From assembly GCA_001179505.1 (NCBI GenBank), contig CDMY01000282.1, positions 62,001 through 126,000 on the forward strand: a DNA stretch of 64,000 bases, in the 5' to 3' direction. Source of the stretch: Vitrella brassicaformis CCMP3155 (Eukaryota; Protista; Chromerida). The notes under the pieces are model-generated. The model was not told where the DNA came from, ran no database searches, and saw only the letters and a list, made by a program, of their open reading frames with translations. A program made the position numbers and the translations under genes. Position 1 is the first letter of the stretch. Every line of letters starts with the position of its first letter. Shown in pieces: positions 34,725 through 55,078 of this stretch.

Positions 34725-37700
34725 TCATTCGTCCGGCAGCTGAGTGTGCCATTCACTGGACACGAACCGCCTGTATCTAGGCTTGTCTCGCATCAAGTCT
34801 TCATGCCTCCCAGCCGTCATCTCGCCGTTCCTGTCGAAGAACAACACATTGTCCGCCTTCTTGACCGTCTGACCACAGCACCCACACACAGACATAACAG
34901 ACATAAACGAACGACACACACAATCGTCCAGACCACCCACATGCTCACCTCCAGCCGATGTGTGATCATCAGCACTGTTGTGCTGTTCCGCCGCCTCAGC
35001 TCCTCAAGCGCGTCAGCCACCGCCCGCTCGCTCTCCGTGTCAAGAGAGGCCGTCGGCTCGTCCAGCACCAGCAGACAGGGGTCCCTCGACAGGGCCCTTG
35101 CAAGGGCCAGCCGCTGCTTCTGCCCCCCACTCAGGCGGCCGCCTCGCTCGCCGCACACGGTGGCGTATTGGTAGGGGAGTCTCTGGATGAACTCGTGTGC
35201 GTGGGCTGCCTTGGCGGCGCGGCGGACGTTGGCACTCGAGTCGGATGTCGATGCCGATGAGAGGCCGTAGCAGATGTTCTCGTGCACAGTGCTGCAGTGC
35301 AGTGCAGTGCATGGTGGCCATGCCATGACATGCATCATTGCAGACATTCGCAGACAGACAGACAGATCAATGGGATGGGCGGTTGTCTGTCTGTCTGTCT
35401 CTCTGTCTGGGTGGTGGTCTCACTCACCGATTGAAGACGGCGGCCTCCTGCTCGACATAGCCCACCTGCTGCCGCCACCAATGGACGTCCAGGTCCCCCA
35501 GCTCCTCACCGTCCACCATGATCGAGCCATTCTGCGGCTCGTAGAACCGCAGCAGGAAGGAGGCCAGTGTGCTCTTGCCCACGCCAGAGGGGCCAACAAG
35601 TGCCGTGAAGGACCCAGGAGGCAGCTCGAACGACACCCTGTCGATCGGCCCTGTGGCGGTGTCCTTGGCTGCGCCATTCACCTCGTTTGTCCTTCTGCCG
35701 GCGTTGGCAAGTGTGGCCGATTCCGCTGGGTATGCGAATGACACGTTGCAGTACTCGATGAGGGGCGGCTGTGTGAGGTGGGGGCGGAAGTTGTCGGCCA
35801 TTGCAACCGCGTCAGAAACACTGTCCTGGGCATCGCCGATGTTTGGTTTTCTGTCGACGAGCTCGAAGTACCTCTGGGAGGCCCGGCGAGAGGTGGCGAT
35901 CGATTGGTACATGTCGGCCAGCTTCTCGATGCCTGGTCAAATCGGCAGGCAATGAATCAATCGCACACGAATTGTGTGAGCCTGCTCTGTGGTTAGTGAC
36001 TTACCTTCAGAGAATCTGGCGCAGTAGCCGCGGAAAGCCACGTACCTGAACATAGATAGAAACAGCCAGCCAATATCGATTGCACTGCACAGGTCAGTCA
36101 GGCGCATCCATCGCATGCGCTTACCTCCCAATAGTGAGCTGGCCATGCACCGTCAGCCACATACCTGCAGCCCAGCCACAGACAGGTAGACAGACACATG
36201 AGACGACCGACACGCATGGACCGGATGTTGGCTCGCCGTCTGCCTGCGGGTTTCATCGATCGCATCGATGGCTGGCTGACCCAAGATGAAGATGGAGTAG
36301 TCTGTGATGTGGTAGAGCAGCCTCCTGCCGTAGCGCAGGAAGGTCTCCCAGTAGAGGGTCTTGTAGATGACACGCAGGAAACCGTCGATGGCACGACCAA
36401 ACAACTGCACGGCACGCAACCGCAGAGACTCACGTGTACGTCTATATCTGTGTGTGGTGTGGTATCTGCCGGCTTGCGCCCGTGTGGCTGGCTGGCTTCC
36501 TGACCTTCTTCTCGGTGGCTTCGCCGCCATTGGCCTGCACCGTGGGAATGGTCGAGAGCGCCTCATTGGCGACGGCCGAGCAGTGGGCCATGGCATCGTT
36601 CTGCTGCAGGCCATACTGGCCAACCTGCCTCGACGCGCGCCGCACCAGCACTACCAGCCTGACACACACGCAGACAGACACAGACCACAACGCCTTAATT
36701 GTCCGGTCCGTCGTGCCATCCATGTTGGCTGTCGGTCTTACTTACAGGGGCATTTCCAGCAAGGCAACACACGCCATCCGCCAGTCTGTTCTGAAGGTGA
36801 AGTACAGGCCGAGGATCGTGTTGAGAAAACCAGCAAGGACCTGCATGGGATGGAGGCAATCCACACACACAGGCGATGCGATGGAGAGAGGGAGGGCACC
36901 CGCCGATGGCTGCCATCGGCTGTGTCGGTCTCGTACATTCTCAGGCCCTTCGCTGAAGATCTTTTGCATTTCATCGGGATCCTGAGAGAGAGGCGCCAAG
37001 AAGGAAATCGATCACAAGCCCATTTACGAGCGACGCCCCCTCTCGCTCTTCTCGTTTGCTTACGTACCTTCACAAGCCGCGAATTAAGCGTCCCGACAGA
37101 GTGCGTCTTGAAGAAACTGACAAGACATCAGATCGATAAGATAACCCACGCGCAACCGCAACAGTCAGTCGATCGGTATTGTCTCTCCAGGGACGTCTGT
37201 CTGTGGGCTAGGCTACTCACGTACCCCTGTTCCTGCCTAATTAAATTCCCAAACAGCTCCAGCCTCAGCCGTGCGCTCATGCGCCACTTGGCTAAGGCAA
37301 ACAGAACACCCACAGCCACGTTCGAGCTGTACTCAAACAGACGCAGCCCAGCCAGCTTCAGAAACAAGGTCCGCAGGGGGGCAAAGGGGCCGAGGGCGAG
37401 GCTCATTTGGCCCGATGACGTTGTGATTGCTGCGGCGGCCACGTCCATGATTCGGCCGTAGACGTGTGCGCGGGCGAATGCGGAGAGGCTGACGCAGAGT
37501 GAGAGGACGAGGGCCGCTATCACCAGGCCCGGCTCTGCCTTATCCCACAGTTCACTCATCAACCTGAGACACACATACACACAGACAGGCAGATTGACGG
37601 CGCACAACCACACATGAGTGCTTTGCGCACCTCTTGACCGTGACGGTCGCATCGGCCGGCTTCTCTTTGACCCCTGTCGCCGACTGCAACATCTGATCCT

Positions 37701-38085
37701 CAGCAGGACCAGCTGACCAATCAGCTGTTACCGCAACAGCAGCATCGTCGTCGGCATCGCCAGTCCCTCCCGTTTCCTCCGCTTGGTGCGCGGTGCCGCT
37801 TGCATCGGCCTCCCGCTGCTGCCGGCTCTCACCCTCCTCGTCACTCTCTCTGTCCTCACTGGGCTGCCTCGCTCCGCTGCTGTCTGGTGGCAAGATGATC
37901 GGTCTTTCAGGTAGCCGCACGGCAGACAGGACCAGGCGCCTCCTCATCCCGCTGCTGAGTTCCCTCGGCTTTGCCGCATGACGGTAATGAGAGAACGACG
38001 GACTCGCTGACAGAGTCGAGTGATAAAGCAAGGGCGGCTGCTGAAAACTGCACCACGGGAGAGCCGACGTGCACAGCGTCGCCAT
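34725..38085 (-). CDS. ABCB-family half transporter (ABCB8/ABCB10/MDL1-like) with an N-terminal extension, possibly an organelle-targeting peptide
   Basis: TMD exons (RMSARLRLELFGNLIRQEQG, RMACVALLEMPL, AMAHCSAVANEALSTIPTVQANGGE), Walker A GPSGVGKS, Q-loop VGYVEQEAAVFN, signature LSGGQKQRLALARAL, Walker B LLVLDEPTASLD and H-loop MITHRL. Confidence 0.92.
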
Positions 38086-38285
38086 ATCTCCGCCGACAAT
38101 GTGCAGCTCAGGCCTCAGATGTGCGGTGCGCTCTCTGATGATCTCGAAGGTGCATCAAAAGATGCAAAGATGGTAAGATCTCTCTTTTCTCCACTTTCTG
38201 TCCCTCCACGCTTCCCACCAGCGTGCATTCGGCCGCTGTTTTTCCAGTCCTGCAGTTCAGCTTTGCGAGCTTGGATTACCAGCCT

Positions 38286-38791
38286 AGGGCTTTGTGAAAC
38301 CGCTCTTTCTTCAGCTCGCGCTGACACGCTTGACATCCTGGTGCAGATGGAAGGTCTGAACCCTCTCTGTGTGGCTGTTGTGTTGCTTGCAGGTCTCTCC
38401 CTTCGCCAGGACGGCCAGATGCCCCAGATCTTTGATGGCCCTGCGCTTGCTGTCCCGTGGCTGGCCTCCCTGTGGCCGCAGGACGACCACAGAGGCAAGA
38501 TGGCCACAGACAAGGTATCAGGCTTTGTGTTTCACTCTCTTTCGAGAGGGGTACCTTTGGAGGGGGCCCTGTGCCATTCGGAGGGCGTCACTTCCTTCCG
38601 CGTCCGGTGCCTGGCTGCTTTCAGCGCACCGCTTTCCGTCGGTGGACGCTTTTCCTTTTGGTCTTGATTGTCATTTGGCCCTGTACCTTTGTAGAGGATC
38701 TCACTTCCTTCCCTCAGCTCCAGTCTGTTCCCTTGCTGCTTTCGGTCCTTTCAGCGCATCGCGATGAACAGTCAGTCACACAGATCACTCC
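38286..38791 (+). repeat. Dispersed promoter/5'-leader module, copy 1 (longest, with an internal partial duplication)
   Basis: cagatggaaggtctgaaccctctctgtgtggctgttgtg (38344-38382) is identical at 48720 and has one mismatch on the minus strand from 53406. Long further stretches are shared with copy 3, ending ...cagcgcatcgcgatgaacagtcag.cacacagatcactcc. Confidence 0.9.
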
Positions 38792-40552
38792 CGTCCGGCC
38801 CGCTGGCGGGCAGCGATCGATGGCTCGTGACGCACGAGTACACGAGGCTGCGGCTCTGCAGCGAAGTCCACCGATGGGAACCGCTGAAACGGTCAGTGAG
38901 TGAAGGCAGGGAGGGTGCGTCTGTGGGCTTTTATATGTCTGAACGTAATGACAGTTTCCCCCCCTATGTCTGAACGTGTGTTGTCCGTACGACGGTGTGT
39001 CTGTCAATGATCAGGCTGGTTGACGAGGCGCGTCGGTACGTCAACGAATGGAAGTCGCTTGAGAGCCAGATGGACTCGTTCTGGCACCGCAAGTCGAGCA
39101 AGATAGTGCTGGCCGTCGTCATGGTGGTCGAGAAGGGCCGCCTGAGGTTCTACAGGGGCATGAACTCTGAGATATCTCTGCCCTCAGGTGAGACTGCCTG
39201 CCTACTCACACACACGACTGCCAGCCCGCCATTTTGTATGATGTTGGATCTGTGTGGTGTGTGGTGTGTGGTGCGTGTGGTGTCCGAGCAGGCTCGAATT
39301 GCGCGGAGCGTTCGGCCATCTCGACGTGTATATCGAATATGCTCACTGTGCGCCGCAGCGACTTCCGCGCCATCGCCGTGGTCGATCCGAAGGACGAGCT
39401 CAACCCAGTCTTTCCGTGTGGCGTGTGCGACGAATGGCTCAAGAAACTACAAGTACACACACAGACACACACACAGTGCCGGCCTAAATTGTCATGTGCA
39501 TTGTGTTCAGGAGGAGTCCCCGATGTTCTCCATCGTGACGTTCACCACCTCCGAGTGCGATGCGATACTCGAGAGATGTCCCCCCCTCGGCTTCCAATAC
39601 AACACCCCGCTCGTCGCCAGCTGCCAGCAGTGCCGCACGCGCCGATTCCGATCCAGGTTACACAGGCACACACGCCTGGGCATGTTGACACACGGCCGGC
39701 TAGCTGATTTGCGCGCGCGCGCGTGTGTGTGTGTGTGTGTGTATAGGCCGAGGAATCGTGTGTATAGGCGCATCAAGGTGATGGGACTGATCAAGAACAA
39801 CTGCCCCGAGGAGGCGCGGGACACCAATGGCGTTGACTCGGGGGTGCTGCCCGATCTCGATGTGCCCAAGACCTTCGCAGGTGCCGCGGTGTCTTTCAAG
39901 GGCCACAGTGTGGTGAATCTTGGCCATACGGGCACCGTCAAGGGCATGACGGCCGCCTGCTCGACCAAGCTGACGCTGGCTGACGACGGCATGGGAGTGG
40001 GCAACGGGACATTCACGCTGTGCTTCGAGCAAAGCCTGGCGAGTGGCGGTGAGGCCACCGGCAGCAAGAAGCTGCTGAGCGGTGTGTATCGTGTGGAGGA
40101 ATGCGATGCGGGCATCCATGACACGCTGCGGATCGCTCTGCAGTGCACAGAGGTACGTACGGAGCACCTGCACGCAACACCTGCACCCCAGAACAGACAG
40201 ATCGATGTGCACTCCACGTGTGTATGTATGTGTCTGTTGTCCGCCCCGCAGATGAGTGGCAAGTTGGTTACGGCGCACACGACTGCGTTTGAGCGTGCAC
40301 ATGCCTTCAGATCCGAGGCAAGTTTTTCCCTGCACGTCGACACGCACAACAGCCAAGCGTCCCTGTCCATCGCCAACCACAAGGACCAGCTCATGTTCAC
40401 GCCGTACCCAAAGGTGAATCAGCCGTGACACACCATCAATATCTCATCACAGCGAGCGAGCGTCTTACTGTGTTTGGCGTTCTCCCTTGTGTGTGCGTGT
40501 GCAGGAGTTGACGATGCACTCCAAGCCGAGCAGTTGCCCATCCGTGCTGTAG
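38764..40552 (+). CDS. Cytidine-deaminase-family (CDA-like, zinc-dependent) protein with a C-terminal domain of unknown function; 3' end 40552 or up to 41094
   Basis: Spliced HRKSSKIVLAVVMV...FYRGMNSEISLPSG|SNCAERSAI...PVFPCGVCDEWLKKL gives the canonical C-A-E and P-C-x-x-C zinc motifs. It is followed by CQQC and a beta-rich region of about 200 aa. Confidence 0.8.
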
Positions 40553-41332
40553 GCAGCAAGGGGAGAGCCCCAACGGATACCCAACGACCTCAAGTCAGCA
40601 AGCAGCCCCCCTTACACACACACGCACACACACACCCCTTACACACACACACACACATACCGCCTGCCTGCCTGCCTGCCTGCGTGCAGGTCGCTCAAGT
40701 TCATCGAGAAGATCGTCTCCACGCCCAGCACACAGGCCACGGCGGCCTCGTCCCCATCCACACGATACAGCACAAAAACAACCCCGCCAACGCGCGCCGC
40801 TTCCACGCCTCCCCCCTCCTCATGGCCCCCAGTAGGCGAGGGGTCGGCGGTGTTGTGCCCCCGCCCCCCGCTGGCCGCGTCGGGTATCGGCTGACGGCTT
40901 CCGGAATGGACTACTTGGAGCGGACGGACAAGCTGAGCACACCACCCCGCACACAGAGGGAGAAGGAGTGCGTCAACATACGTCAAGATGAACACATGAC
41001 TCCTGCTGAGTGCCAAGATCACACCATGAGAAGGCAGTGCTGCAGTGGCAGTAATTGTGACTGTGTTCACAGGTTACTGCTGCCGGATTTTTAAAGAGAT
41101 TTGCGTGTGTTGTGCATGGGAGTGTGTTCATTTGTGTATCTGTTCGTCTGTGACACAAGACATACGGAACGGCACATTAGACATGACCGTAAAGCATAGC
41201 ACACTTAATCTCCTTGGCAGATGCCCCGCGCAAAGCACAATATATGTATCTGTACCTCGATAAGCTATGTGTGGCTACATTGTGTTGGGTCGCGGCGGCA
41301 GTTCACGGCCGATGGTTTGGCGGCGCTGACTA

Positions 41333-44230
41333 TCACGACGTGAAGGTCAGCACCTCCAACTCATCAGCCATGAATTTCACACTACCACCCAGCCTGACAT
41401 CCTGGATGAGCCCGCGAAACCCAGCTTCATTGTCAGACAGATAATCGAAACCCAGCTGACGTCTCCACATTGGCTGACGGCAGCTACGCATATCATCTAT
41501 AGGGCCGCTGTCCCGGCCGCCATAGCCGAGACACAGACCCTCACGCCGATACTCACGCATAAAATCACCGGCACCGACACCGATCCACAACTTTGCCATC
41601 CCATCCACTGCCGTCTCCCGACCAGCCAAAACTACATGCTGCCCGTCTTGCTTTATGGCGATCTTGGTCGGTCCGTCGAAGTTGCCGGCTAGGGAAAACG
41701 GCACCACGTGGCATTCATATCGACTGACAACGTCCGGGTAGTTGGGCTCGCGTAGTCCGGCAGGGATGAAGCAGCCGAACACATATGTGTCTTTGCGGAT
41801 GACCAGCACAATCGGCCGGACGCCCCCCACTCGGTCCAGCATGTCACCATACTGACAGCCATCGCGTGATGCCCTACAACAAACACTCACACAGACATAT
41901 GCAGACACACACAAACACACGCAGATGTAGACACATCATACATGATGACTCACGCAGATGTCTGTCTCTCTGTGTACCTGTATATGAGTGAGAACTGTCT
42001 CCCTTGAGCGAACCACTCAATCAGCTGATCGACGTCAGCATGACTGAGAGACGAACACTCATCGGGGGCCGCAGCAACCGGGTGCGCGCTCGTGAGCTGC
42101 GGGACGGCAGCCGTGTCGACCCTCTGAGCGCAAACAGACACACAAACAGATACTGCACAATGAGATTCCATGTGATCAGCTCTTCTTCTACTGTCTGACC
42201 TGTGACGAGATGGTTGACACTCCACCAACATGAATGACCTCCAGCTCATCCGCCATGAACTCCATACTACCTCCGAGGATAGCATAGCCATACGTCTTGT
42301 CCCTCACATCCAGGTAGCCGTCAGGTACATCATTACTGCGGAAGTGACGGCAGCTGCGCATATCATCAATAGGGCCACTGTCTTCATCGCGATAGCCCAA
42401 CCACAGACGCCCATCGATCGTCAGCTTCGCCTGGGGACGGGGACGCCCATACCTCAGGCGACTCGGGAGGAAGCTGTCACAGTACAGTGCCCCCTCTCCC
42501 CCAGCTACTTCCACACGGTGACCGTCGTCTCGTGGGGTATCCATCTTGGTCGGTATATGGAAGTGGCCGGCGAGGGAGAATTGCCACACATCACACTGGT
42601 ACTCGTTGACAGCGGTGGGGTCGTCGGGAGCCTTGATGCTGCCATCCATGCAGGCGCCGAAGATGTATTGGCTCTTCCGGATGACGAACACCAAGCCCCT
42701 CGCATCGCCCACACATCGAAGGAGATCGCCAAAGCAGCGACCGTCACGCGAGGCCCTGCAAAGGAACGAAATGCGGGCAATGATGCACGCATGCCGCGTA
42801 CTTGTAGAGCAGTTCCGGTCCGTATGGTCTGGTCGGTCCAAGAAATCGACGGATCGCCGCACATTGGAAGGGGTTCAAACTGCTGCCCTCAATCACCTGC
42901 AGACAAACAGCACACGACGGACAAGGAATAACACAGGCGTATTGACGTGTCGTATCTGACCTCTGGCCTCAGTAGTGACAGTCCGTCGACACGAATGACC
43001 TCCAAATCATCAGCCACGAATGTCTTACTCCCCCCGACACACAGAGCACACACTGAACCTCAGTTACCCCCCGGTCGTGTATGTGTGTGCGTGTGTCCGT
43101 ACTTGTCGAACGGCCTTCCTCCTGGTGTAGCATTTGTCACACAGGTCGAAGTCACATCTACGGCAACGGTACCTATCATACACGCACGTACAGGAAGACG
43201 GCCAGCTGGTATTTGTATTCCGCCAGTCATCCCGGCTGCACTCCTCCTTTCCTCACCTGCCAACGTTGCTGTCGCTGCCGAAGATGCCCGCACTCAGACA
43301 GCTCCCGCCAACTGCACACACCACACACACCGCACCGCACAATGGTTGGCTGCTGGCCGTCTTCCCGTCAGTGTGTGTTGTGGCCGGTCAGCTCACATAC
43401 ATTGTGGCGCGTTGCATCTCCATCCGCATCTCCATCTGCCCCTTCTGTGTGAGCGCTGCAGTATGTGCCCAAGCAGACATGTCGGCTTGAAACTCTGTGT
43501 CGGGATCGGCAGCCGGCTATTGCCCGCCTCCTGGGGACTCCCATTGCCAGCCTCATCTCGCACCCCCGAAAAACCGTCTGGCACATAATCACTGAGGATG
43601 CATGTGCGTACATCATCTGCAGGGCCAACGTCTTGATCGCCATGGCCCAACCACAGACCCCCACCGATCCCCATCCTCGCTCCCCCATGCACTGCGCCCT
43701 CCCGCCCAGCCACATACACACGCTGGCAGTCCCGAGGGATGTCGATCTTGATGGGCGTGCCGGAGTCGCCGGCAAGGGAGTAATGCCACACATCACACTT
43801 GTACTCCTTGCGGGAATTTGAGATGTCGGGCAGCTTCAGCCTTGCTCCCATGTAGGCGCCGAACAGACACTCGTCTTTCCGAATGACCAACACGAGAGAG
43901 CTCGCGTCGCCCACACAGCGCACCAAATCATCATAGCTGCCGCCATCGCAACATGCCCTGACGTATAAAACACACGAGAGCGACCGGTTGATGACTCCTC
44001 GCGTGCCCTCTGTGCTGTGTGTTGCATGTGTGCGTGTGCACCTGTACAGCAGTGTGAATGTGCAATCGTCGAACACGGATGGCACGAACAGCGAGTGGAG
44101 GGCCGCACACTCTGACGCATTCAGACTGCTGCCAACAAGTAGCTGAAAAGGACACATGATACCAATAGACGCCCATCACTGTGTGCTGGTGGGCATCACG
44201 TACATGTGCTGGCTTCTGGACGCCTGTCAT
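41333..44230 (-). CDS. Protein with three tandem TLDc domains, the first interrupted by a ZZ-like zinc finger
   Basis: Three LLY(R/K)|A(S/C)(R/C)DG...(VG)...LV(L/F)VIRK..Y/CxFG...FSLAG...LxLGY/H...DDxRS/TC...GGSxxFxADE/DLEV units, joined in frame by GT-AG introns (SSQ|RVD and RPE|VIE). ZZ-like exons lie at about 43103-43530. Confidence 0.82.
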
Positions 44231-44859
44231 GCTGCTATCGTCGTTCTACAAAGACAAGAAACGACAGCAGAGCATTGCTCTGCCACTACAAGAACCAGAT
44301 GGTATTTCTGCTTACGAGAAGAAAAGGAAGCAACAGAATCAGGCCGGGAAGACCAGCACCCATGCTTATCAGCAACACGCAGGCGATCCCGAGAATCAGG
44401 CCTGCTATATGAGACCCTTCAGGACTCTTCAGTGAACGCGTGTCGATTCGAACACAGCCGAACACCATCACAAGGAACGAAAACACAAGAAGATGTGCTG
44501 ACGATGTCTTCATCATGACCGCTTCTTCTGGATTCTTTTCGTCCTGACCTGCATTTTTGGGCTTCTCTCGTCTTCAGTTCTCAGGACAGAAAACGTGTCG
44601 CCATCCTGATGACGCACGAGACAGAAGGGGCGTCTTGCGAAAATTGGCAGCGAGCTGTTAAGTCTTTATCGCACCTCTTGTATGTCACTCAGGCGGTCAT
44701 CGACAGTGACGCCGATCGCCGACTTGACCGACAAACGAGACCCAGGAGTGTAACGAGACAACACCTACACAAAGACACCATCGATACAATCAAGACAGAA
44801 AGGCTGCAATGCAATCTAGTGTTCCCCATAGACTGCTCACCACAGATGGCGGCGCTTCC

Positions 44860-46065
44860 TTGAACTCGGGGGATTTGTCTCTCTTTCGGATCTTAGGTTG
44901 TCTGTCGCCGCGTGCCGTCCTCCTGTCATCTGAATGGACCACCTGAGAGAACACAGAATGCACGTGTGATGCTGATCTTTGCTAGGCTTGGTTGCACTCA
45001 TGATGTCTTCCCTTACGCTCATGGTGTTACGGCCAGGCGACTGTTCTGACCCCCTGCCCACACCAGCGCGTATATCGTCGTCTGCGGCACTAGGAGTGGC
45101 CTGCAGCCGATGGTCAATATACACACGCGTGTCTTGTTTACTGTCATGTTGTCATCTTGTCCGATCCGTGTACCTGTCCGCTCAGGTTATCAACCAGCAT
45201 AGGCCGTTTTCTTTCTGCCGGCCCTTCTGATTCGCTGCGGTCCTGGCCGATGAATTCATATGCGGCAAGTGCAGCTTCATCGTCGGTCGGCTGCTGTGCG
45301 GCGGAGGAAGATGCGTTGGGCTGTATGGCCGGCTGCAAGGTAAGGGCCATCGGTTGGAGTTGGGGGTGGGGCGGATGCATCGGCCTGGGCGGCGCCGCTG
45401 AGCCAGCCATAAATGATGAGGAGCCGTCCATTGGGAAGGGCATTGGCGGCGAAGGGTAAGAAACAGCCATCAATGGCTGCCAATTGGACACATACGCAAG
45501 CCGTATGCGTGAGGGAATGTGAGGCCATCTGACTACTACAATGTACCTCGCCTGTGAATTCAGGCGTGTTGCGGCCCCAATGCCGCTCCCCAATATGACC
45601 TGCACACACACACTCAATGGAGGCCCTTCTGTATGGTCACATCAAGAAGTGCTCATCTGTCTGGGCCACGTGGAGGCGGAGCTGCTCGCTGATGCGTGCA
45701 GCGAGGAGACGCACCTGTGAGAGGCAAACAACCGTGAGTATGCACCCGTCGGCCAGACCGTCCGAACACACACTTACGGCATCGCTTCGCAAATTATCGG
45801 CATTTAAAGCATCCAGCCGCCAGACAAGCAGGCCAATCTCCTGGTGATCCACCACACCGGTCACGTACTCAAACCGTGTGTGTGTGTGTGTGTGTGATTG
45901 CAATCGGCCCACCTGGGGGGACTGCATCTGCAGTTGGGCGATGAGGTCTTGCCCGCGTGCTCGGCCGTCGATGACTTCACGTATCGCATTCAAAAGCTCA
46001 TCAAACGTCTGCATTACACATGGACCCACAAGCATCTGTGGTGGCCGGCGCCCTGTGGGTGGCAT
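44860..46065 (-). CDS. Hypothetical spliced gene or gene remnant with no recognisable domain
   Basis: Exon-like segments QTFDELLNAIREVIDG..., RFEYVTGVVDHQEIGLLVWRL and PLMAVSYPSPPMPFP... with plausible splice sites. I could not join them into one consistent frame. Confidence 0.3.
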
Positions 46066-46327
46066 CCTTTCAGTGATCTACCTCTGGCGGATGCATGGCA
46101 CCATTGAAGTATTCCGGCTCCTCCCAATCCATCGACTGCACACCGCATGTGCATACATGGACACTCGCAACACGACTGAGCACGCTGATTATTGTCTTAT
46201 CCTTCACCTACCGCCATTCCGTCGGTGTTGTCAGCGGCGGGTGGGGCGGCGGCAGCAGCAGGCCCCTCACATGGCCAAGGAGAATTCTGAAGAGACAGCG
46301 CCATTAATCGATGCAGGATGACCTGTC

Positions 46328-46780
46328 TTAACGCCTTTGACTGTCCTGCTGTGTACCCACCTGCTGGCATCGCTCCTTGAATGCTTTCATGTATCTCTTC
46401 TTGAAGGCTGTGACCCAGTTGTCGCTCGCCGAGAAGCGATCATCGATGCCCAAGCGGAAGGCGATCTTCATCGCCTTACGCTTGATGGCCCTGGGAGGGA
46501 CAGCTGCTGGATCCCCCTGGCTGGCCATCCACTCTCTCATCGGGTCCTCAATTTGGGGATACTTGAGTGGTGTGATGCGCTTGTTGCTAAGGTCCGTTAC
46601 CTCTATGCTCTTCGCTCTCTGCGTCTTGATCGAATAGTACCACTTGTTGAACAGCTTGGGGTCCAGGCCGTTCTCTCTCGCAAACTGAGGTTTCGAGATG
46701 TTCTCCCCACTCTCCTTGCGTCGGATGAATTCGTCCACCAGCCCTAGCCGCATGCCAATTGCCACTTTCAGTGCCCTATA
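46328..46780 (-). mobile_element. pogo/Tigger (Tc1-mariner)-derived CENP-B-type double HTH DNA-binding region with no DDE catalytic domain
   Basis: ALKVAIGMRLGLVDEF...SKPQFARENGLDPKLFNKW (psq/CENP-B N-like HTH), then LKYPQIEDPMREWM...IKRKAMKIA...FSASDNWVTAFKKRY (HTH_Tnp_Tc5 pattern F-x-A-S-x-x-W-x-x-x-F-K-K-R). Stop codon follows about 20 codons later. Confidence 0.75.
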
Positions 46781-48659
46781 AGACGCTCTATCAGATACCT
46801 CCTACTTACACGTAAACACACACAGAAGGTGGAGACAATGTGTTGCTTCCACAGTGTGTTTGGATCTGTTGCCTCCTACATGTGAGAACTGTGCCGTCGC
46901 GGGTCTTCTTGTGGACAGCGATGGCGGGACGGATGCTGTCCGGTGGTGTGATGATCCGTGCGCCGACCGCATGAGGGGCATGTTAGGAGGGAGCGCAGAG
47001 GCGTCCCAAGGGTGCTGTGCGGCAAACACACGGGTGGACATGGATCAGGGTACATTCACGCAGGACAGACAACATGAACGTTGCTGCTCACCTCTGCTTG
47101 TCCCGTCTGCCCGAATGCTGGAGAGGGCGGCATTGTAGCGGGGCTGAATGTCCCAGCTGAATCAATCATCTGTAGGTGGAGCGACGGCTGTGACCGTGGT
47201 TCAGCGTCCGGCTGACAGGGAGGCGCGTTGGAAGGCCGACCGAGGGGCTGCGATGTCGAAGGGTCAGCACCGAGGACTGAGGGCACTGAGAATTGAAAGT
47301 GACTGTCAAAAGGCGGCTGAATGGAACAGCAGACAGAAACATCTCATCGGATACAGATCATCGAGGGCACTAGAGCCTGCATACTTGCGAGAAACTGTAT
47401 TCACGAGGTGTCTCCCCGCCTGCTTGCAAGTCTTCGGGCATCGGAGCGTCCCTCCTGACCGTTCGAACACTTTGCTGCACACCACCACTCCCTTCGTGTC
47501 CCGCAGTGAATGATCCTTCTGGAAACGAGAAGGCAAGAGGGGTGCACAGAGGTGGCACTTCCTGTCGTCACATTGAGTGTACCTGTCGGCTGCGATGGTC
47601 CTGCGTTCGGATCTGAGGGCAACCCGGAGAGGACCGTGCGGTCCTGTGGTATGTCCGATGGAGGGTCGCTGGGGCTGCATACTGACAATCAAAGCGTACA
47701 GAAATGAACAATGCGTTTCCCATGGGGTGTTTCATGGGCAGAGCACGTGTGATCATCACCCGAAGTCGAAGGAATGATGCCATCTCGGTACTGCCTCGCT
47801 AACATGATCGCCTGCGCCACTTGTCCCTGGCCATCGCCTCGGACAGGGAACTGCTTGACGATCCCTTCCCCCACGACACCAATGGACACGGTCCCACTGC
47901 TGTCGCCGTAGCACACCAGGAGGCCCTGATTGAGCGGGTCGGAGGCCACCAACTTTTTGACGTGTTCTGCCAGCGCCAGAGGCTGGGTCGAATCAGAAGC
48001 ATCTGAACAGCGGAGCAACCGGCATTTGGAATGCGTGTATCTCGGCGCATGTGGCCCACTCACTTGCAGGCCCGATGGGCCCTCCCTGTTGCTGCTCGCG
48101 TGACTCATCACCGTGACCAACCTGACAGACAACACATCATGACGGCAAGTTCAGTGGCTCATCACGGCTCTGGAGGAGATCCATTGCTGCACAGTACCTG
48201 TGTTTGTCCGACATGGCGTTGCTGCTCCTCTCGTGTGGGTCCCCTCATCGAACGGCCCTGACTCACAAAACACACGGGAGAGTCAGGCAGGAGGCCATGG
48301 GGCGCGACGCATCACACTACCTGTGAGTCAACACGGCAGCAAGCACCTGTCGGGAACCCTCCGAAAAATGCGCCAGGACGTGCGGAAGGCCTAGGGCATC
48401 CTGAAACCGCCCCTTCTCCAGCTCGCAGAGAAAGACGGGAGAGGACGGACAGAAATGAGTTGCCCTCCTCCGTCGGGGGGTCGGGACTCGCTCCGCGTTC
48501 CGGCGGCCGCGTCGCGAAATGCATGCAAAGCCCCCAAGCTCGCATGCAAGCCCCCATCAAGGAAGACGGTACCGAATGAAAAAGTCTCGATGGCCCCAAT
48601 TACGAACGAACAAACGAACGAACACGAACTTCGGGTAAGAGCGTGCCTCGCTCGCTAAA

Positions 48660-48933
48660 AGCTCGCGAGTCCCGAAAGACGCCCAGGGCTCTGCCGCCAG
48701 AGCTTGAAACGCTGGCGCCCAGATGGAAGGTCTGAACCCTCTCTGTGTGGCTGTTGTGCGGTCTGCAGGTCTCTTCTTTCGCCTTTTCGAATGGCACACG
48801 GTCCTCTCTTTTGAGAGGGGTACCTTTCCAGGGGGCCGTGCCATTCCAAGGGCCTCGTCAGCTCCGCGTGTGGTGCCTGGCTGCTTTCAGCGCATCGCTT
48901 CCGTCGGTAGACTTGGTCTTGATTGTCATTTGG
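48660..48933 (+). repeat. Dispersed promoter/5'-leader module, copy 2 (internally deleted)
   Basis: 39-nt identity to copy 1 at 48720, then gagaggggtacctttc/gg.ggggcc.tgccatt...gtgcctggctgctttcagcgca.cgctt.ccgtcggt...ttggtcttgattgtcatttgg. It lacks the central segment of about 130 nt. Confidence 0.85.
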
Positions 48934-48972
48934 TAGGCCTATGTGATAGAAAACTATCGCTCCTTGGGTTTC

Positions 48973-50150
48973 ATGCGGTCTTACTCGGTGATGCCGCGGA
49001 TGCCATACAAGACTAAGCTATGCACGAACTACGAGCAGGTAATGACCACGTTATGCAATCTCGCCATCGCCCCTTCACAAGGTTGCTTGGTCGTTCAGGG
49101 TTGTTGCTTTCGTGGCGTTGACTGCGGATACGCGCACGGACTTGCATGTGGACTTGTCGAAGTCGATACCTCAAGTAACAAGCACCACAAAGAGCGACGC
49201 CTGCAATACTCCACTTTCTCTCTTTGTATGTGTGTGTGTGTGTCTTCCAGGACACAAGACAAGACACGCTTGTGCGAGTTCCTCAAGTTGGGGAGCTGCC
49301 CGCGTGGTGCTGAGTGCACCTTCGCTCATGGCCGGAAGGACCTGCGCCTCACCAAGATGTGTGACAGCGTGATAAATGGTGAGAAGCGCAAGCATGGGAA
49401 GGCTAGAGTTACGGACACTCGTGCGTGGGTTGTCTTGGTGCAGGTATGGTGCTCGTATGGCGGCGACTGTCTGTTTGCCTACGAAGAAGAAGAGCTATCA
49501 TGTGTACACAAAAGCAATTGAGCCACTCACTCGCTTGAATGTGCATGCAAATGTCTTTGCTGTGCGTCGCATGTTATGCAGCGTGGAGCGTGTGGTGCGC
49601 ATTGGAGAGATCTACTACAGCCAGGACGCCATTAGTACGCCATTCAGGGATTGGACGAGCCTACAGGAGACGCTAGACGCGCTCACCTCCGGCGACCTCG
49701 GTCTGAGCGACATACCTCAGATCACCGTCAGAAAATACGGGGAGCGCTACTATACGCAGGTACGCTGGCAGGGACAGAGAATGAATGCATGATAGCAAAA
49801 GTGTGTCCGTTCTGTTTTCGTGCAGAACAATCGCTGTCTGGCAATGTTGGAGGAGTTCAAAGAATCCCCGGTTCCCCACACCATTCCTCGGCCCCAGCAA
49901 GGACTGCATCCGCGTCTCAGTCTGGATGGAGTCCATGATTGAGCAGCACACAAAGAACTGGGACAGGTTCACCACACCCAACCGTGGTGAGTCGGTCGAA
50001 TACAGGGGAGAGCCTCTGGTGGCGCGGTGCGGCAGGTGCAAGGAGGAGACGTGTGACTGTGGGACGGTGCGGCGCGTGCCCCGGCAAAGTAATACCAACC
50101 TGTTTTGTGCTGGTTCCGACCTATTCTTTCCTCCCCTTGTCATCGCATGA
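48973..50150 (+). pseudogene. Tandem CCCH zinc fingers fused to a ParB/sulfiredoxin-like domain; apparently frameshifted
   Basis: YKTKLCTNYEQ|GCCFRGVDCGYAHG, KTRLCEFLKLGSCPRGAECTFAHG and TKMCDSVING..CSYGGDCLFAY, then IGEIYYSQDAISTPFRDWTSLQETLDALTSGDLGLSDIPQITVRKYGERYYTQ|NNRCLAML. The C-terminal CIRVSVW...RFTTPNRGESV is in a different frame, and several splice phases do not match. Confidence 0.65.
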
Positions 50151-50307
50151 TTGACTGAATTATCGTGCGGTGTCGATCGCATGTAGGTGCATGCATCCAC
50201 ATGCCTTGGCTCGGCTCCCTCTTCTCGACAGATGGACTGCCTGTGGTGTCTGGTGCATGTCTTGACGCATCAGTCAGGGTGCGTGCATGTTGTGCGTCTC
50301 TCTCTCG

Positions 50308-53052
50308 TCACTCTGGGCAACGAGAAGAGAGCCTCGCATGACAGTAAGTACACAAGAGCTGACTTGCTCTACCTATGGTTGTGATGCCTGCCTCCCTCCC
50401 TCCTTGCCTGCGTGAATGCCTGCCTGTGTGCGTCTGTGTTTGTGTGGGTGCATGTTTGTGGTACTTATTGATCATCGTCATGAGGGTGTCTATGATGTTT
50501 TGTGTGCGGTGTGATGTGACATACGTTTTCCCATTTGGTCTTGCTTTCATTTGGTCTTGGAAAACTGTCGCACCAGCTGGCCGGACGCAGAGAGAGAGAG
50601 AGAGAGTGGTTAGCGGTGGACAGCGACACGTACCATACATTGACTCATGATGGTACTCAGTTAATCATCTTCACATATCACGCGTCATCAAACACAAAGC
50701 TGTAGCCACCGACAGCCGCAGCCGCAGCCGCGGACGGACAGACGGATTGTAAGACAAACAGCACAAGATAGAAAATCCACAATACAGCACCAATAATGCA
50801 ACAACACCAATAATGCAACAACACACAACAGATACACACAGGCAGGCAGGCAGGCAGGCACCCACTCCACACATCCCGTTGCGTCAACCATTCATGCACC
50901 CATCACGCACCCATGTACAGAGAGACAGACAAGCGCATGAAGGACAAACGCATGTGCTCGCGCCCATCGCACACAAGCCCCAGCCTTTCCACAACACATA
51001 CATACACACGAACGGATGGACACACAGAGCGTACGACAGCCACCAACAGGCAGGCAGGCAGCCAAGCGCAGCGCTCACTCCACACACATCCTGTTGCGTC
51101 GGTGGTGGGCCGCCCGCAAATCGGCGGCGTGCTTGTATGCTTTCTCAACCGCCTCCCTCACCGCCTTGTGTGTGTGGCCCTTCACACTGAATGCGTGACA
51201 TCCGTGGAAGCCCCCAATCTCCACCCCAATCATGATGCGGTGGGATTCGCCGGTCTGCCAGGCCGTCATGATGATGTCGTCGGGCAAGTGAATATCACTG
51301 ATGATGTCGTGGGCCTTGGCGAGCAGCTGTGTGTCGTCCATTTCGACGTCCTCTTCCTCGTGATCGCGGTGGTAGCTGTCGTCTCTCAGGGCCACATTGG
51401 GGCGTAGTGAGGCCCCGAGAGGATCGGGACTGCTCCACGCACCTACAACCAACGCGAAGGGGGAAAGAGCGATTGCGTGCTGAATGGATCGACGGATGCA
51501 CGTGTCCAGATGCCTTACTTGAGCAGGTACTCGTCGTCGGTTCCACATCTGTAGCATGCTGTTGGGGCTGCATCGGCGGTAAGGGGCCTGAAAACTGTGC
51601 AGCCTGATGGATGGTCGCGGAATACACGAGAGAGAGCGCTTGTTATCACTTTTCCCCACCAACCAGCCAGTTAGCTGTTTCCACTGCACATGGCTCACCC
51701 CAGCATAGCTGTCATCGGCGCCGTCGATCGGCAGCACGTCGAAGGGTGGCCTGCATGCACCATAGTCCACAACCCGCAACACATGCACGCCACTCTACTC
51801 ACCCCATCAGCTGATCTAGCGTGTGTGCTCACGGTATTGCTTCGTCGTCATCGGCGGTGGACGCCCCGGCAGACGAGGTGTCGCTTTGTGGCTGAGGGAC
51901 CACCGTAGCGGCGGAGAGCTGGGTCGCGGTAGCTGCACGTACACACACACACACATACACAGGGGCACGATGTGTGGGTGACTCGCAGAGAAGGCGGCCC
52001 TCGTACGTGTGCTGGTCACGGTCGCCGGCGTCGGTGGCACAGAAGGGGCAGCAAGCTGCTGCACAATAACATAAACCACGACAAGAGCACATCAAGATGC
52101 GACTTGCTGCTATGTGTGTGTGGTCCACACCTCTGCATCCGCATCGGTCAGTCGGTGAGTCATGCGCAGGTGAGAATGCACCACATTGCGGCGGGGGTTG
52201 TTNNNNNNNNNNNNNNNNNNNNNNNNNNNNNNNNNNNNNNNNNNNNNNNNNNNNNNNNNNNNNNNNNNNNNNNNNNNNNNNNNNNNNNNNNNNNNNNNNN
52301 NNNNNNNNNNNNNNNNNNNNNNNNNNNNNNNNNNNNNNNNNNNNNNNNNNNNNNNNNNNNNNNNNNNNNNNNNNNNNNNNNNNNNNNNNNNNNNNNNNNN
52401 NNNNNNNNNNNNNNNNNNNNNNNNNNNNNNNNNNNNNNNNNNNNNNNNNNNNNNNNNNNNNNNNNNNNNNNNNNNNNNNNNNNNNNNNNNNNNNNNNNNN
52501 NNCACATTGCGGCGGGTGTTGTTCAAGCCGCAGATACGCCCGCCGGCACACGGCGCCACACACGTGGCGCAGAGTTTGTCGCCCGGGCCCTTCTTGACGG
52601 GCACATAACCCACCACGCCCACCAGCTGTCCTCCGTGATACACACGCACGCAGCACTCGCTGTTGTAGTCAGTTGCCTGCTCGCCCAACTCCATCCCCGG
52701 CTTGCGGAACACCTGCAGCCGATACAGGTAGCGGAGCGGCCGCCAGCGGCCGTCCTCGTCAATGGCGGCCGGCAGGAGGGCGATGTCCCACCCCTCCTGA
52801 CCCATGATGCGCTCAGTGCTGCCACCAGTGAGCCACACGTGACGGTGCTCTGCCGGAGCGGTCATGTCTATCGGGTCGGCCAGGGAGTGAGAGCGACGGC
52901 GGTCGAGCTCGATGGCATCCCAGTGGTCGTGAAGGACACGCAGGAGGGACGCAGCAGGCAAATCAGCTGCAATCACACACACACACACAGAGGTGATGTC
53001 ACAGCAGTTTCCGAGTGGGTGCATGGAGTGATCTGTGTGGCTGACTGTTCAT
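50308..53052 (-). CDS. Orphan spliced gene (or genes) spanning the second gap; no recognisable domain
   Basis: ATG AAC A|gtcagc...gattgcag|CT GAT TTG gives MNTDLPAASLLRVLHDHWDAIE...CVRVYHGGQLVGVVGYVP. Later exon-like blocks read CCPFCATD and DIHLPDDIIMTAWQTGESHRIMIGVEIGGFHGCHAF. The 3' structure is unresolved. Confidence 0.45.
52203..52502. other. Assembly gap (300 N) with near-identical 21-nt flanks
   Basis: cacattgcggcgggggttgtt (52182-52202) versus cacattgcggcgggtgttgtt (52503-52523). Confidence 1.
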
Positions 53053-53470
53053 CGCGATGCGCTGAAAACACCGAAAGCAGCCAGGGAACAGACTGAAGCG
53101 GAGGGAAGGGAGTACCTCGGTAAGGTACAGGGCCCCTCCGAATGGCACAAGGCCCCTCCGAATGGCACAGGCCCCCTCCAAAGGTATCCCTCTCGAAAAG
53201 TACTCAAAGGAGAGTGAAACACAAAGCCTGATACCTTGTCTGTGGCCATGTTGCCTCTGTGGTCGTCCTGCGGCCACCAGGGAGGCCAGCCACGGGACAA
53301 CGAGCGCAGGCCCATCAAAGATCTGGGTCATCTGGCCGTCCTGGCGAAGGGAGAGATCTGCAAACAGCACAACAGCCACACAGAGAGGGTTCAGACTTTC
53401 CATCTGGGCGCCTGCCCCGCGCTGCGAGCTGACGAAACAACGGTTTCACGATGCCCTTTCTCTGCGAGCT
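53025..53470 (-). repeat. Dispersed promoter/5'-leader module, copy 3 (inverted)
   Basis: The reverse complement aligns with copy 1 from agggcatcgtgaaaccgttgtttcgtcagctcgc through cagatggaaagtctgaaccc..., ccacagacaaggtatcaggctttgtgtttcactctc and on to cagcgcatcgcgatgaacagtcagccacacagatcactcc. It contains a short tandem ggggcc.tgtgccattcgga. Confidence 0.9.
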
Positions 53471-53493: not shown

Positions 53494-55078
53494 ATGCGCC
53501 AGCTGATCTTCGCTCTTTTCCTCACGGCCGTGATGAGCCAAGCGTCCGCCTTCCAGCCCCAGCCCCAGCATCTTCCCCTAAGGCACCAGCGCATCGAGCT
53601 GCAGCGTCAGAGCCGCCTGCGTGCAGCCCGTCAGCCAGGCGTGCTGACAAAAGAGAGGGAGGCGGTGGATCTGCACTACATCGACATCCCTGCGAATGGT
53701 AGGTATTATGCGGCATTAGCACGGGCTGCGTCACACCGCGCGAGATACAAGCTGCTTTATTTGCTGGTTTGCACATTGCTACATACACAGGGCATGATAG
53801 CCGGGAGGCGGTTTTGCTCCTTCATGGCCTTCTCGGTGAGGACACGGAACACACAGACGCACACACGCACACACGGCACGAACGAGGAGAAACGCCTGAG
53901 ACCTGTCTCTATGCTGCTTGGCGCTCCCCTATAGGTTCGTCTCGCAATTGGATGACATGGGCGAAGAGGTGAGAGGAGATGCAATCAAGTCGACGGTGTG
54001 TTGGCTCACGGTGTGTATTGTCGTGCGGGTTAGGTTGTCGAGTGAGCTTGACACATCGAGGCGCATCATCGTCCCTGACCTCCGCAACCATGGCTCCAGC
54101 ACGCACGCTGAATCCATGACATACGCGTAAGTGCATGGAGAATCAAACGTAAGTGCACGGGCTTTCGCCTGCAATTCTGTGTGCAGCGAGATGGCTCAGG
54201 ACGTGCTGCGGCTGCTCGAGTCCGTCAACGAGGACCGAATCGTCTGCGTCGGACACAGTCAGCACCCACCCAGCACAGCTAACAACCCAAACCACACACG
54301 TCTGTCCTGTGAGGCTGTCGCTTGCCTGCAGGCATGGGTGGCAAAGTCGCAGCAGCTCTCGGCCTGCTTGAACCGTCTCGCGTCGATGGGCTGGTGATTG
54401 TGGATGTGGCCCCGGTGCCGTACTCGACAGAGGACGGTAACGACTGGAAAGAAATCAGGAGGTACGTGTGTGATGGACGCGATGAAGGTCCGCCCTGCCT
54501 CACTCACTCCACCACTCTTCATTTACCCGCTCTCTATGCTCCCTCCCTCCCCGCAGGATCATCAATGGGCTCCAGGCACTGCCTCTTCATGCTCTGTCCA
54601 CCCGTCAGGATGCCGACAGGGGTTTGAGGGATGAGCACGGCATCGATGACGATGCGCTGAGAGCCTTCGTTCTGACCAATCTTGAGAGGCACGAGGACTC
54701 ATGGAGGTGGCGAATCAACCTGGACGCAATCGCACGGTGGGCCAGAGAGACCAATAACACAGAAGGAAAGGCAGACGAGCCAGCACGGTTTGAATGCCTG
54801 GTTTTGGGGATGTGTGTGTCAGGTCGCTCGAGGACCTGGCGCTGTTTGATCTGGAGGCCGCGTGGGGCAGCGAGTCCGAGCTGCCCCCTCCTTACGAAGG
54901 CGACACGCTGTTCGTGATGGGCAGCAACAGCCGCTACATCCAGTCGCGGCACCTGGACGTCATCCAGCGGCTGTTCGCCTCCTTCACCCTGCAGACAGTG
55001 AAAGAGGCGGGGCATTGGGTGCATGCCGACCAACCTGACCGAATGGTTCAGGTCGTCAAGGCATACCTCGACAGGTAG
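53494..55078 (+). CDS. ABHD11: ABHD11/YbfF-like alpha/beta hydrolase with a bipartite signal plus transit peptide
   Basis: LLHGLLG|[18 protein letters not shown](S)|MGGKVA (nucleophile elbow), [27 protein letters not shown] and [12 protein letters not shown]-terminus [22 protein letters not shown]. Confidence 0.9.

What the first reader, a model, noticed from the sequence alone, without database searches (positions are those of the whole stretch)
38286..53470. A portable, intron-containing promoter/5'-leader cassette placed in front of three unrelated accessory genes
Seen: three homologous segments (38286-38791 +, 48660-48933 +, 53025-53470 -) share a 39-nt core, identical between copies 1 and 2 and with one mismatch in copy 3, plus longer collinear blocks. 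Each lies immediately 5' of, and in the same orientation as, a different gene: the cytidine deaminase fusion, the CCCH-ParB gene and the orphan at 50308-53052. Copies 1 and 3 also abut the start of a divergent housekeeping gene (ABCB, ABHD11). The module carries two short GT..AG segments (38354-38392 and 38515-38546) and the AGCTCGC motif. Its coding frame is not conserved: copy 3 has a 1-nt insertion and copy 2 a large deletion. I found no terminal inverted repeats, poly(A) tail or target-site duplication. Inference: a mobile or duplicating expression cassette (promoter plus spliced 5' UTR) that gives new or orphan genes transcription, rather than a conventional TE.
Basis: partly seen in the sequence, partly recalled or inferred. 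Interest (0 to 1): 0.82.

Follow-up and report, generated by a model that had tools for sequence, protein, structure and literature searches.

The report
Duplicated promoter-leader fronting unrelated algal genes
In the alga Vitrella brassicaformis, the promoter, untranslated leader and start codon of one lineage-specific gene family have been copied locally in front of two unrelated genes, and older relatives of this leader front other gene types elsewhere in the genome, so it is a natural case of genes acquiring a borrowed 5' end, not a jumping element.

Summary
The repeat is real. Copy 1 is 38286-38791 (+). Copy 2 is 48711-48933 (+), with a displaced promoter piece near 48392-48440. Copy 3 is 53025-53457 (-). 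Copies are 90-96% identical in shared blocks, and these are the only close copies in the 72.7 Mb Vitrella brassicaformis genome.

It is not a free-standing cassette. It is the native 5' region of a roughly 20-member gene family ("family C", precomputed Pfam PF26910). The supposed orphan, gene C, belongs to that family, and copy 3 sits in its native context. The repeat ends with the family's start codon mini-exon and the first 21 nt of intron 1.

Copy 1 is joined at that point to a 5'-truncated deaminase paralogue. Its annotated protein starts at the borrowed ATG. Copy 2 lacks the ATG part and fronts a CCCH zinc-finger gene.

A profile of the conserved core finds about 21 diverged homologues genome-wide. 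At least 12 lie head-to-head with a Tc5/CENP-B-type HTH gene. Their downstream genes include family C, a second deaminase, a CTP synthase and two PolyA_pol-type genes.

I found no TIRs, TSDs or DDE domain. Spread looks like local segmental duplication. Splicing of the leader is untested because no RNA data were available. The assembly gap is an overlap artefact, and reading across it stays in frame.

The scan noted this same stretch before (s1-205541).

The parts
38286..38791 (+). Copy 1 of the module, the most complete copy. It holds the promoter word AGCTCGCG (38313-38320), the conserved core (38344-38407), a candidate leader exon (38393-38514, bounded by CAG| and |GTATCA), a variable stretch, the family-C start mini-exon ATGAACA (38764-38770), and the first 21 nt of family-C intron 1 (38771-38791).
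38764..40552 (+). Gene A, a chimeric LmjF365940-type cytidine-deaminase paralogue (annotated protein P0001, 407 aa, 7 exons). Its start codon and first 9 codons come from the module. Homology to paralogues P0002 and P0003 begins at 38791-38794.
40870..40968 (+). Relic of the deaminase family's C-terminal exon. It is 79% identical to P0002 residues 576-608 and lies beyond gene A's annotated stop.
46328..46765 (-). Tc5/CENP-B-type HTH exon (PF03221). It belongs to a family with 41 matches in the genome, and members typically lie head-to-head with leader homologues. Here it is the divergent partner of copy 2.
48392..48440 (+). Displaced upstream part of copy 2, containing AGCTCGCA at 48420. An insertion of about 290 nt separates it from the rest of copy 2.
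48711..48933 (+). Copy 2 of the module. It has the core and part of the variable stretch. It lacks the leader-exon 3' half with its GT donor (equivalent to 38408-38534) and the ATG part (equivalent to 38679-38791).
48991..50150 (+). Gene B, a CCCH zinc-finger gene whose first exon reads MPRMPYKTKLCTNYEQ. The rest is uncharacterised, and it has one distant paralogue on contig C257. The 3' limit is approximate.
53025..53457 (-). Copy 3 of the module, in its native family-C context. Two AGCTCGCA words lie at 53423-53430 and 53463-53470, and a 20-nt minisatellite at 53115-53174.
51075..53052 (-). Gene C, a family-C member and not an orphan. It has an ATG mini-exon at 53052-53046, a candidate intron 1 at 53045-52967, and exon 2 from 52966. 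An alternative in-frame ATG lies at 53024.
52203..52502 (.). Assembly gap inside gene C exon 2. It is flanked by overlapping 21-nt ends and is an artefact.
   Evidence: (D14)
37552..38085 (-). First exon of the divergent ABC transporter. Its own AGCTCGCA word (38264-38271, minus strand) lies outside the repeat.
53494..55078 (+). Divergent alpha/beta-hydrolase (ABHD11-like) gene. Its ATG is only about 37 nt from the end of copy 3.

Best explanation
The three segments are paralogous copies of the 5' control region of a Vitrella-specific gene family (family C).

The region is made of these parts, in order:
- a compact, often bidirectional promoter carrying the genome-wide word AGCTCGC(A/G);
- a strongly conserved ~60-nt core at the start of the leader;
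- a ~122-nt block that looks like a leader exon;
- a variable stretch;
- the family's 7-nt start-codon mini-exon, followed by intron 1.

Copy 3 is the native arrangement, attached to gene C. Local segmental duplication or illegitimate recombination placed a second copy in front of a 5'-truncated deaminase paralogue. The join lies 21 nt into family-C intron 1, so the borrowed ATG now opens gene A's reading frame. A third, partly deleted copy sits next to the family's usual HTH partner gene and fronts the CCCH gene B.

The same process has happened repeatedly in this genome. Older leader homologues, usually duplicated together with the divergent HTH gene, front a second deaminase, a CTP synthase, two PolyA_pol-type genes and others.

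What is shown: homology, breakpoints, copy census and gene identities. What is inferred: that the module supplies transcription and a 5' UTR, and the order of events.
For: - Only three close copies exist genome-wide.
- Gene C's exon 2 is 62-69% identical in protein to at least 15 loci.
- Those paralogues share the structure leader, then ATGAAYG|GTRAGT, then a ~80-nt intron, then exon 2. The module's 3' end is homologous to this. In copy 3 the homology continues past the repeat boundary.
- blastn and pattern searches find the core upstream of paralogues.
- Profile R1 finds about 21 hits at E < 1e-6, seven of them at loci that contributed no sequence to the model.
- At least 12 of these lie 660-1930 nt from a divergent HTH exon.
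- Gene A's homology to P0002 and P0003 starts exactly at the module boundary, 38791-38794. P0001 starts MNSQSHRSL.
- P0003's locus carries a different leader subtype fused through a family-C fragment to a deaminase.
- On C908, a 1.65-kb HTH-plus-leader unit is duplicated at 88% identity with sharp ends and different downstream genes.
- In three subtypes a family-C gene and a non-family gene share the same leader subtype.
- AGCTCGCA dimers occur 250 times in the genome against 0 for the reversed control. Five of the nine window hits lie at the copies.
Against: - No transcript data were available, so promoter activity, transcription start site and splicing are all inferred.
- Copy 3 lacks an ~80-nt block that copies 1 and 2 share, so none of the present copies is the direct parent of another.
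- The HTH partner lies beside copy 2 and not beside copy 3, so the ancestral position of the unit in this window is unresolved.
- Gene C's intron-1 donor (GTCAGC) is weak, and an alternative unspliced ATG exists.
- Gene conversion between older pre-existing leaders could mimic recent duplication.
Confidence: 0.72

Rival explanations
1. The HTH gene plus leader is, or recently was, a pogo/Tc5-derived mobile element. It carries an outward-facing promoter and 5' exon. The window copies would be fragments of such insertions.
For: - The divergent partner is a Tc5-transposase-type DNA-binding domain with 41 matches in the genome.
- The HTH-plus-leader unit is duplicated as a block with sharp ends in front of different genes.
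Against: - No DDE domain was found in the three longest HTH frames.
- There are no TIRs and no TSDs at unit ends, and no inverted core lies 3' of the HTH gene in the window.
- HTH copies are old (30-59% amino-acid identity to the window's copy) and clustered on a few contigs.
- Copies 1 and 3 carry no HTH gene.
- Woo et al. 2015 report only 1.5 Mb of TEs in Vitrella.
Confidence: 0.12
2. The three loci each had an ancient leader homologue, and local gene conversion homogenised them. Under this reading there were no recent duplications placing the module in front of new genes.
For: Leader subtypes cluster by contig (C646 x3, C282 x3, C908 x2), as concerted evolution would produce.
Against: - The copy 1 boundary coincides to the nucleotide with the point where deaminase homology begins. 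This marks a fusion breakpoint and not a conversion tract end.
- The 5' boundary is equally sharp.
- Conversion would still require an earlier capture event.
Confidence: 0.1
3. The module encodes a shared N-terminal coding exon, a signal-peptide-like MEGLNPLCVAVV... starting at 38347, spliced onto the three genes.
For: In copy 1 an ORF runs from 38347 to 38514. A GT...AG span (38515-38754) would put it in frame with the annotated ATG. The ATG and first 12 codons are kept in all three copies.
Against: - Copy 3 has a +1 frameshift and copy 2 a 127-nt deletion that removes the donor.
- Differences between copies 1 and 3 are not biased towards synonymous changes.
- Distant homologues keep the DNA core but not this ATG.
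- The annotated P0001 starts at 38764.
Confidence: 0.04
4. The repeat is an assembly artefact or collapsed repeat.
For: A scaffold gap lies nearby, and the short-read velvet assembly has many gaps.
Against: The copies differ by 4-10% and by several indels. They have unique flanks, and one junction lies inside an annotated gene model.
Confidence: 0.02

Closest known systems
Chimeric gene origin by 5'-end (promoter/first-exon) capture through segmental duplication. Drosophila jingwei and Sdic are examples from my own knowledge of the literature.
   Same: A duplicated segment carrying the promoter, 5' UTR and start codon of one gene is fused to the body of an unrelated gene. The breakpoint is sharp, and former intron sequence is recruited as coding.
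   Different: - Here the same donor class has been reused several times, with at least three to four recipient gene families.
- It usually travels with a divergent HTH gene.
- Expression of the chimeras was not shown.
Gene-fragment-capturing or promoter-donating transposons (Pack-MULEs, Helitrons, pogo-derived domesticated genes). Comparison from my own knowledge.
   Same: There is a recurrent association of a transposase-type DNA-binding gene with a sequence block that ends up 5' of diverse host genes.
   Different: No TIRs, TSDs, Helitron ends or catalytic domain were found. Copy number is low, copies are old and clustered, and the close copies in the window lack the HTH gene.
Bidirectional (head-to-head) promoters of the compact chromerid genomes (Woo et al. 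2015, PMC4501334).
   Same: The module sits in short divergent spacers and carries the genome-wide promoter word AGCTCGC(A/G).
   Different: Ordinary head-to-head promoters are not paralogous to each other over hundreds of bases. This one is a duplicated family with a conserved leader core.
Spliced-leader trans-splicing of dinoflagellates and perkinsids.
   Same: A common 5' leader sequence appears on unrelated genes in an alveolate.
   Different: Here the leader is encoded in cis upstream of each gene, in about 20 diverged copies. There is no SL RNA gene array and no Rfam hit. It is not a member of this class.

Membership tests
DNA transposon / MITE / gene-capturing TE | Terminal inverted repeats at the ends of the repeated unit | tested here: not met
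   No TIRs at module ends, at HTH/family-C units, or at the sharp ends of the C908 unit.
DNA transposon / MITE / gene-capturing TE | Target-site duplications flanking copies | tested here: not met
   The flanks of the two C908 units and of the window copies share no short direct repeat.
DNA transposon / MITE / gene-capturing TE | Many dispersed near-identical copies | tested here: not met
   Only 3 close copies, all within 15 kb. About 21 old diverged homologues are clustered on a few contigs.
pogo/Tc5 transposase | DDE catalytic domain following the CENP-B/Tc5 HTH domains | tested here: not met
   Only PF03221 was found in the window ORF and in the three longest HTH open frames tested (416-452 aa). 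Other copies were not examined.
Chimeric gene by 5'-end capture (segmental duplication) | The donor segment can be identified in its native gene context | tested here: met
   Copy 3 is contiguous with a family-C gene. Its ATG mini-exon and intron 1 are homologous to those of paralogues beyond the repeat boundary.
Chimeric gene by 5'-end capture (segmental duplication) | The recipient's homology to its own paralogues begins at the breakpoint | tested here: met
   tblastn of P0002 and P0003 starts at 38791-38794, which is the module's end.
Chimeric gene by 5'-end capture (segmental duplication) | The chimeric transcript is expressed from the captured promoter | not testable with these tools
   Records of this genome are withheld from the transcript and contig look-up. 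There is only an annotated model starting at the captured ATG.
Promoter region of Vitrella genes | Presence of the over-represented word AGCTCGC(A/G) just upstream of the leader | tested here: met
   The word lies 18-52 nt upstream of the core in all three copies. The dimer occurs 250 times genome-wide against 0 for the control. Its role as a promoter signal is a lead from earlier scan notes and was not tested here.
Structured non-coding RNA / SL RNA | Match to a known RNA family, or a conserved secondary structure | tested here: not met
   No Rfam hit in the module, zero consensus pairs in 20 homologues, and z = 0.83.

The most novel reading that the evidence does not exclude
The Tc5-type HTH gene, its bidirectional promoter and the leader exon form a semi-autonomous, duplicating 'promoter-donor' unit. 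The HTH protein binds the conserved leader core, which may derive from a former transposon end. Each new local copy would then wire whatever gene lies downstream (deaminase, CTP synthase, CCA-type enzyme, zinc-finger gene) into one HTH-controlled regulon. This would be a natural promoter-trap system in a relative of apicomplexans.
Probability: 0.12. Interest if true: 0.8.

Novelty: new variant of a known kind. Interest (0 to 1): 0.5.

Why it matters
This is a clean, breakpoint-resolved example of how new genes get a promoter, a 5' UTR and even a start codon, in a lineage (chromerids) where gene birth and promoter architecture are almost unstudied.

The same donor region has been reused for at least three to four unrelated recipient families. 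It usually travels with a transposase-derived DNA-binding gene. That raises a testable question: do these genes share regulation?

The work also defines a conserved ~60-nt leader core and places it relative to the genome-wide AGCTCGC(A/G) promoter word. This is useful for annotating transcription starts and for building expression tools in chromerids.

Three annotation corrections follow:
- Gene C is not an orphan.
- The scaffold gap inside gene C is an artefact.
- Gene A is a rearranged chimera.

Tried and rejected
- Shared signal-peptide exon: rejected because of the frameshift in copy 3, the deletion in copy 2, and the absence of the ATG in homologues.
- Classical TE: no TIR, TSD or DDE domain found.
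- Former-TIR idea: no inverted core lies 3' of the HTH gene in the window.
- Known RNA or structured RNA: no Rfam hit, no covariation, unremarkable folding energy.
- Extension of copy 1/3 homology to the ABHD11 start codon: not significant.
- Similarity between the MPRMP start of gene B and the ORF downstream of the C908:154190 leader: a 14-nt match scoring within the range of the shuffles (23 against a maximum of 26), treated as chance.
- 'ParB' domain in gene B: no Pfam hit even at E <= 1.
- Function of the family-C domain: the local Pfam copy gives nothing, and the Atlas look-alikes are all below 0.85 with a poor model, so I did not pursue it.
- Transcript evidence: the look-up of encoding contigs returned nothing because records of this genome are withheld. 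The annotated models of genes B and C did not appear in the word searches.
- Joined spliced protein models were deliberately not built or searched. All protein searches used single exons or read-through ORFs by reference.
Full report
**Source of the window.** Protein hits name the organism as Vitrella brassicaformis CCMP3155. That paper also reports a very compact genome, frequent head-to-head gene pairs and only about 1.5 Mb of transposable elements.

**Observation.** The three homologous segments exist.
- Copy 1 (38286-38791, +) is the most complete.
- Copy 3 (53457-53025, -) matches it over 421 aligned positions with 388 identities. Clean blocks reach 94-96%. It has a 1-nt insertion, lacks the equivalent of 38598-38676, and has a 20-nt minisatellite there.
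- Copy 2 (48711-48933, +) keeps the core and part of the variable stretch. It lacks the equivalents of 38408-38534 and 38679-38791.
- Copy 2's AGCTCGCA-bearing upstream piece sits about 290 nt further 5' (48392-48440).
- No similarity extends beyond 38286/53457.
- Whole-genome DNA searches with the 506-nt module and with the 73-nt core return only these three places.

**The gap.** The 21 nt on each side of 52203-52502 are the same sequence with one mismatch (D14).
- The piece upstream of the gap aligns to paralogue P0005 up to residue 179.
- The piece downstream aligns from residue 174.
- Both flanks therefore encode the same residues. The gap is an unmerged overlap, nothing is missing, and the frame is kept.

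**The three downstream genes.**
- Gene A is the annotated 407-aa protein P0001, an LmjF365940-type deaminase (PF14421). It has 7 exons and introns of about 58-123 nt.
- Its paralogues P0002 and P0003 align to the window only from 38791-38794 onward, which is exactly where the repeat ends.
- Gene A has also lost part of a RanBP2-type finger and carries a novel C-terminal half. A relic of the family's C-terminal exon lies at 40870-40968.
- Gene B has a CCCH finger (PF00642) and one distant paralogue. The proposed ParB domain has no Pfam support.
- Gene C is not an orphan. Its large exon is 62-69% identical to at least 15 other loci and to annotated proteins P0005-P0010 (precomputed Pfam PF26910). 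Its last exon has one distant match, on contig C801, which also holds a distant family-C locus.
- This family ('family C') has a conserved N-domain, a Cys/His finger-like motif and a variable tail.

**What the module is.** Upstream regions of family-C paralogues show a common gene structure. A leader is followed by a 7-nt start mini-exon (ATGAAYG|GTRAGT), an intron of about 80 nt, and then exon 2.
- The last 37 nt of the module (...CGCATCGCG ATGAACA|GTCAG...) are homologous to this mini-exon and to the start of intron 1.
- In copy 3 the intron homology continues past the repeat boundary into gene C's own intron. Splicing 53046|52966 would give MNTDLPAASLL..., which matches the paralogues' N-termini.
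- Copy 3 is therefore in its native context.
- In copy 1 the family-C sequence stops 21 nt into intron 1 and is joined to the deaminase exon. The annotated gene A reads from the borrowed ATG through former intron sequence (MNSQSHRSLPS|GPLAGS...).

**Deeper homology.**
- The core is also found, diverged, about 300-540 nt upstream of family-C paralogues' exon 2. It ends ...GTGTGGCTGTTGTG YTG YYTGCAG|GTCTC and is followed by ...GGCAAGATCT.
- AGCTCGCA lies 55-95 nt upstream of the CAG| site.
- A sequence-only profile (R1, from alignment A2) finds about 21 hits in the genome at E < 1e-6 (8e-7 or better). The next hit is at 2.6e-4.
- Seven hits (six loci) were not in the model. Among them is C646:11672, about 270 nt upstream of the coding start of the second deaminase paralogue, P0003.
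- The P0003 locus shows a leader of another subtype, truncated, followed by a fragment of the family-C finger fused to the deaminase.
- The block from CAG| to the donor AAG|GTATCA (38393-38514) is homologous end to end to blocks in the C908, C268 and C453 loci. Those blocks likewise end in AG|GTAAGA or GTCAGA.
- That pattern suggests a real leader exon.
- No conserved RNA structure or Rfam family is present.

**The HTH partner.** The ORF at 46328-46765 (-) is a Tc5-transposase-type HTH domain (PF03221), with 41 matches in the genome.
- In at least 12 loci a leader homologue lies head-to-head with such an HTH exon, 660-1230 nt away (1.9 kb for copy 2).
- Where I looked, a short first exon of the divergent gene (presumably the HTH gene's) starts only about 110-130 nt from the CAG| site.
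- No DDE domain was found in the three longest HTH frames tested, and no TIRs or TSDs were found.
- On C908 a 1.65-kb unit is present twice at 88% identity with sharp ends. It consists of the HTH gene, the bidirectional promoter, the leader exon and about 100 nt of the next intron.
- Different genes follow the two C908 units. One is a CTP synthase (PF06418), one of two in the genome.
- Two PolyA_pol-type (CCA-enzyme-like) paralogues carry the same leader subtype as a family-C gene on C238.
- Leader subtypes therefore mix family-C genes with non-family genes in three groups, and copies of one subtype tend to lie on the same contig. This points to repeated local transfers.

**Promoter word.**
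- AGCTCGCA dimers spaced 5-12 nt apart occur 250 times in the genome, against 0 for the reversed control.
- In the window the word occurs 9 times against 3.35 expected, and 5 of those are at the three copies.
- Earlier scan notes on other windows call AGCTCGC(A/G) a general promoter word lying about 15 nt before transcript starts. I did not test the start-site claim.
- If it holds, the conserved core would be the first ~60 nt of the mRNA.

**Interpretation.** Its idea of a duplicating promoter/leader that fronts unrelated genes is largely right. But the thing is the native 5' end of one gene family, spread by local segmental duplication and not by transposition, and one of the three 'recipients' is the native owner.
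- The proposed mini-introns of 39 and 32 nt are unlikely. They are shorter than any annotated intron here, and the GT of the first is not conserved.
- Even so, two of their ends coincide with the probable leader-exon boundaries.
- The order of events in the window is unresolved. Copy 3 lacks a block that copies 1 and 2 share, and the HTH partner lies beside copy 2.

**Limits.**
- No RNA evidence could be obtained. Records of this genome are withheld.
- The annotated models of genes B and C were not retrieved.
Exons and read-through ORFs were searched separately by reference.
- The function of family C remains unknown.

Noticed in passing
window 52203-52502: The scaffold gap inside gene C is flanked by the same 21 nt with one mismatch, and both flanks encode the same residues of the paralogues. 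It is an unmerged contig overlap and no sequence is missing.
   Followed up: yes
window 40870-40968 (+): A relic of the deaminase family's C-terminal exon lies about 320 nt past gene A's annotated stop, 79% identical to P0002 residues 576-608. Gene A has also lost half of its RanBP2-type finger and gained a ~190-aa segment with no Pfam match.
   Followed up: partly
window 46328-46765 (-) and 41 genome matches: There is a family of short Tc5/CENP-B-type HTH genes with no DDE domain in the three long frames tested. They are clustered on contigs C268, C646, C718, C908, C260 and C238, and often lie head-to-head with the leader.
   Followed up: partly
genome-wide; window 38264, 48420, 48537, 53423, 53463: AGCTCGCA dimers (spacing 5-12 nt) occur 250 times in the genome against 0 for the reversed control. 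This is evidently a general cis-element of Vitrella promoters.
   Followed up: partly
L050 (G000:C646:10000-14000), 1673-2160: The annotated deaminase P0003 is itself a chimera. A family-C-type leader, truncated about 125 nt after the core, is followed by about 190 nt of unrelated sequence and then a fragment of the family-C Cys/His finger fused to the deaminase exon.
   Followed up: partly
L043/L044 (G000:C908:144400-150400 and 152700-158700): A 1.65-kb HTH-plus-promoter-plus-leader unit is duplicated at 88% identity with sharp ends, 8 kb apart. One copy is followed by a CTP synthase paralogue, the other by an unrelated ORF. The HTH exon is flanked by a ~100-nt direct repeat.
   Followed up: partly
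window 53115-53174 (-) and 48786-48852 (+): Copy 3 has a 20-nt minisatellite (three units) in the variable part. In copy 2 the same ~19-nt motif forms an inverted repeat around a 30-nt spacer.
   Followed up: no
window 48431-48710: The ~290-nt insertion that splits copy 2 contains TGCATGCA-like words and a further AGCTCGCA at 48537. This may be a second promoter.
   Followed up: no
window 41300-44200 (-): A gene with three internally repeated units (D3/D5) was noted by another first-stage reader as a triple TLDc protein with an inserted ZZ-like finger. I did not examine it.
   Followed up: no
window 49800-49930 (+): Gene B's last part switches reading frame between '...NNRCLAMLEEFKE' and '...IRVSVWMESMIEQ...' with no intron of normal size in between. 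This could be a frameshift, a pseudogene or a very short intron.
   Followed up: no
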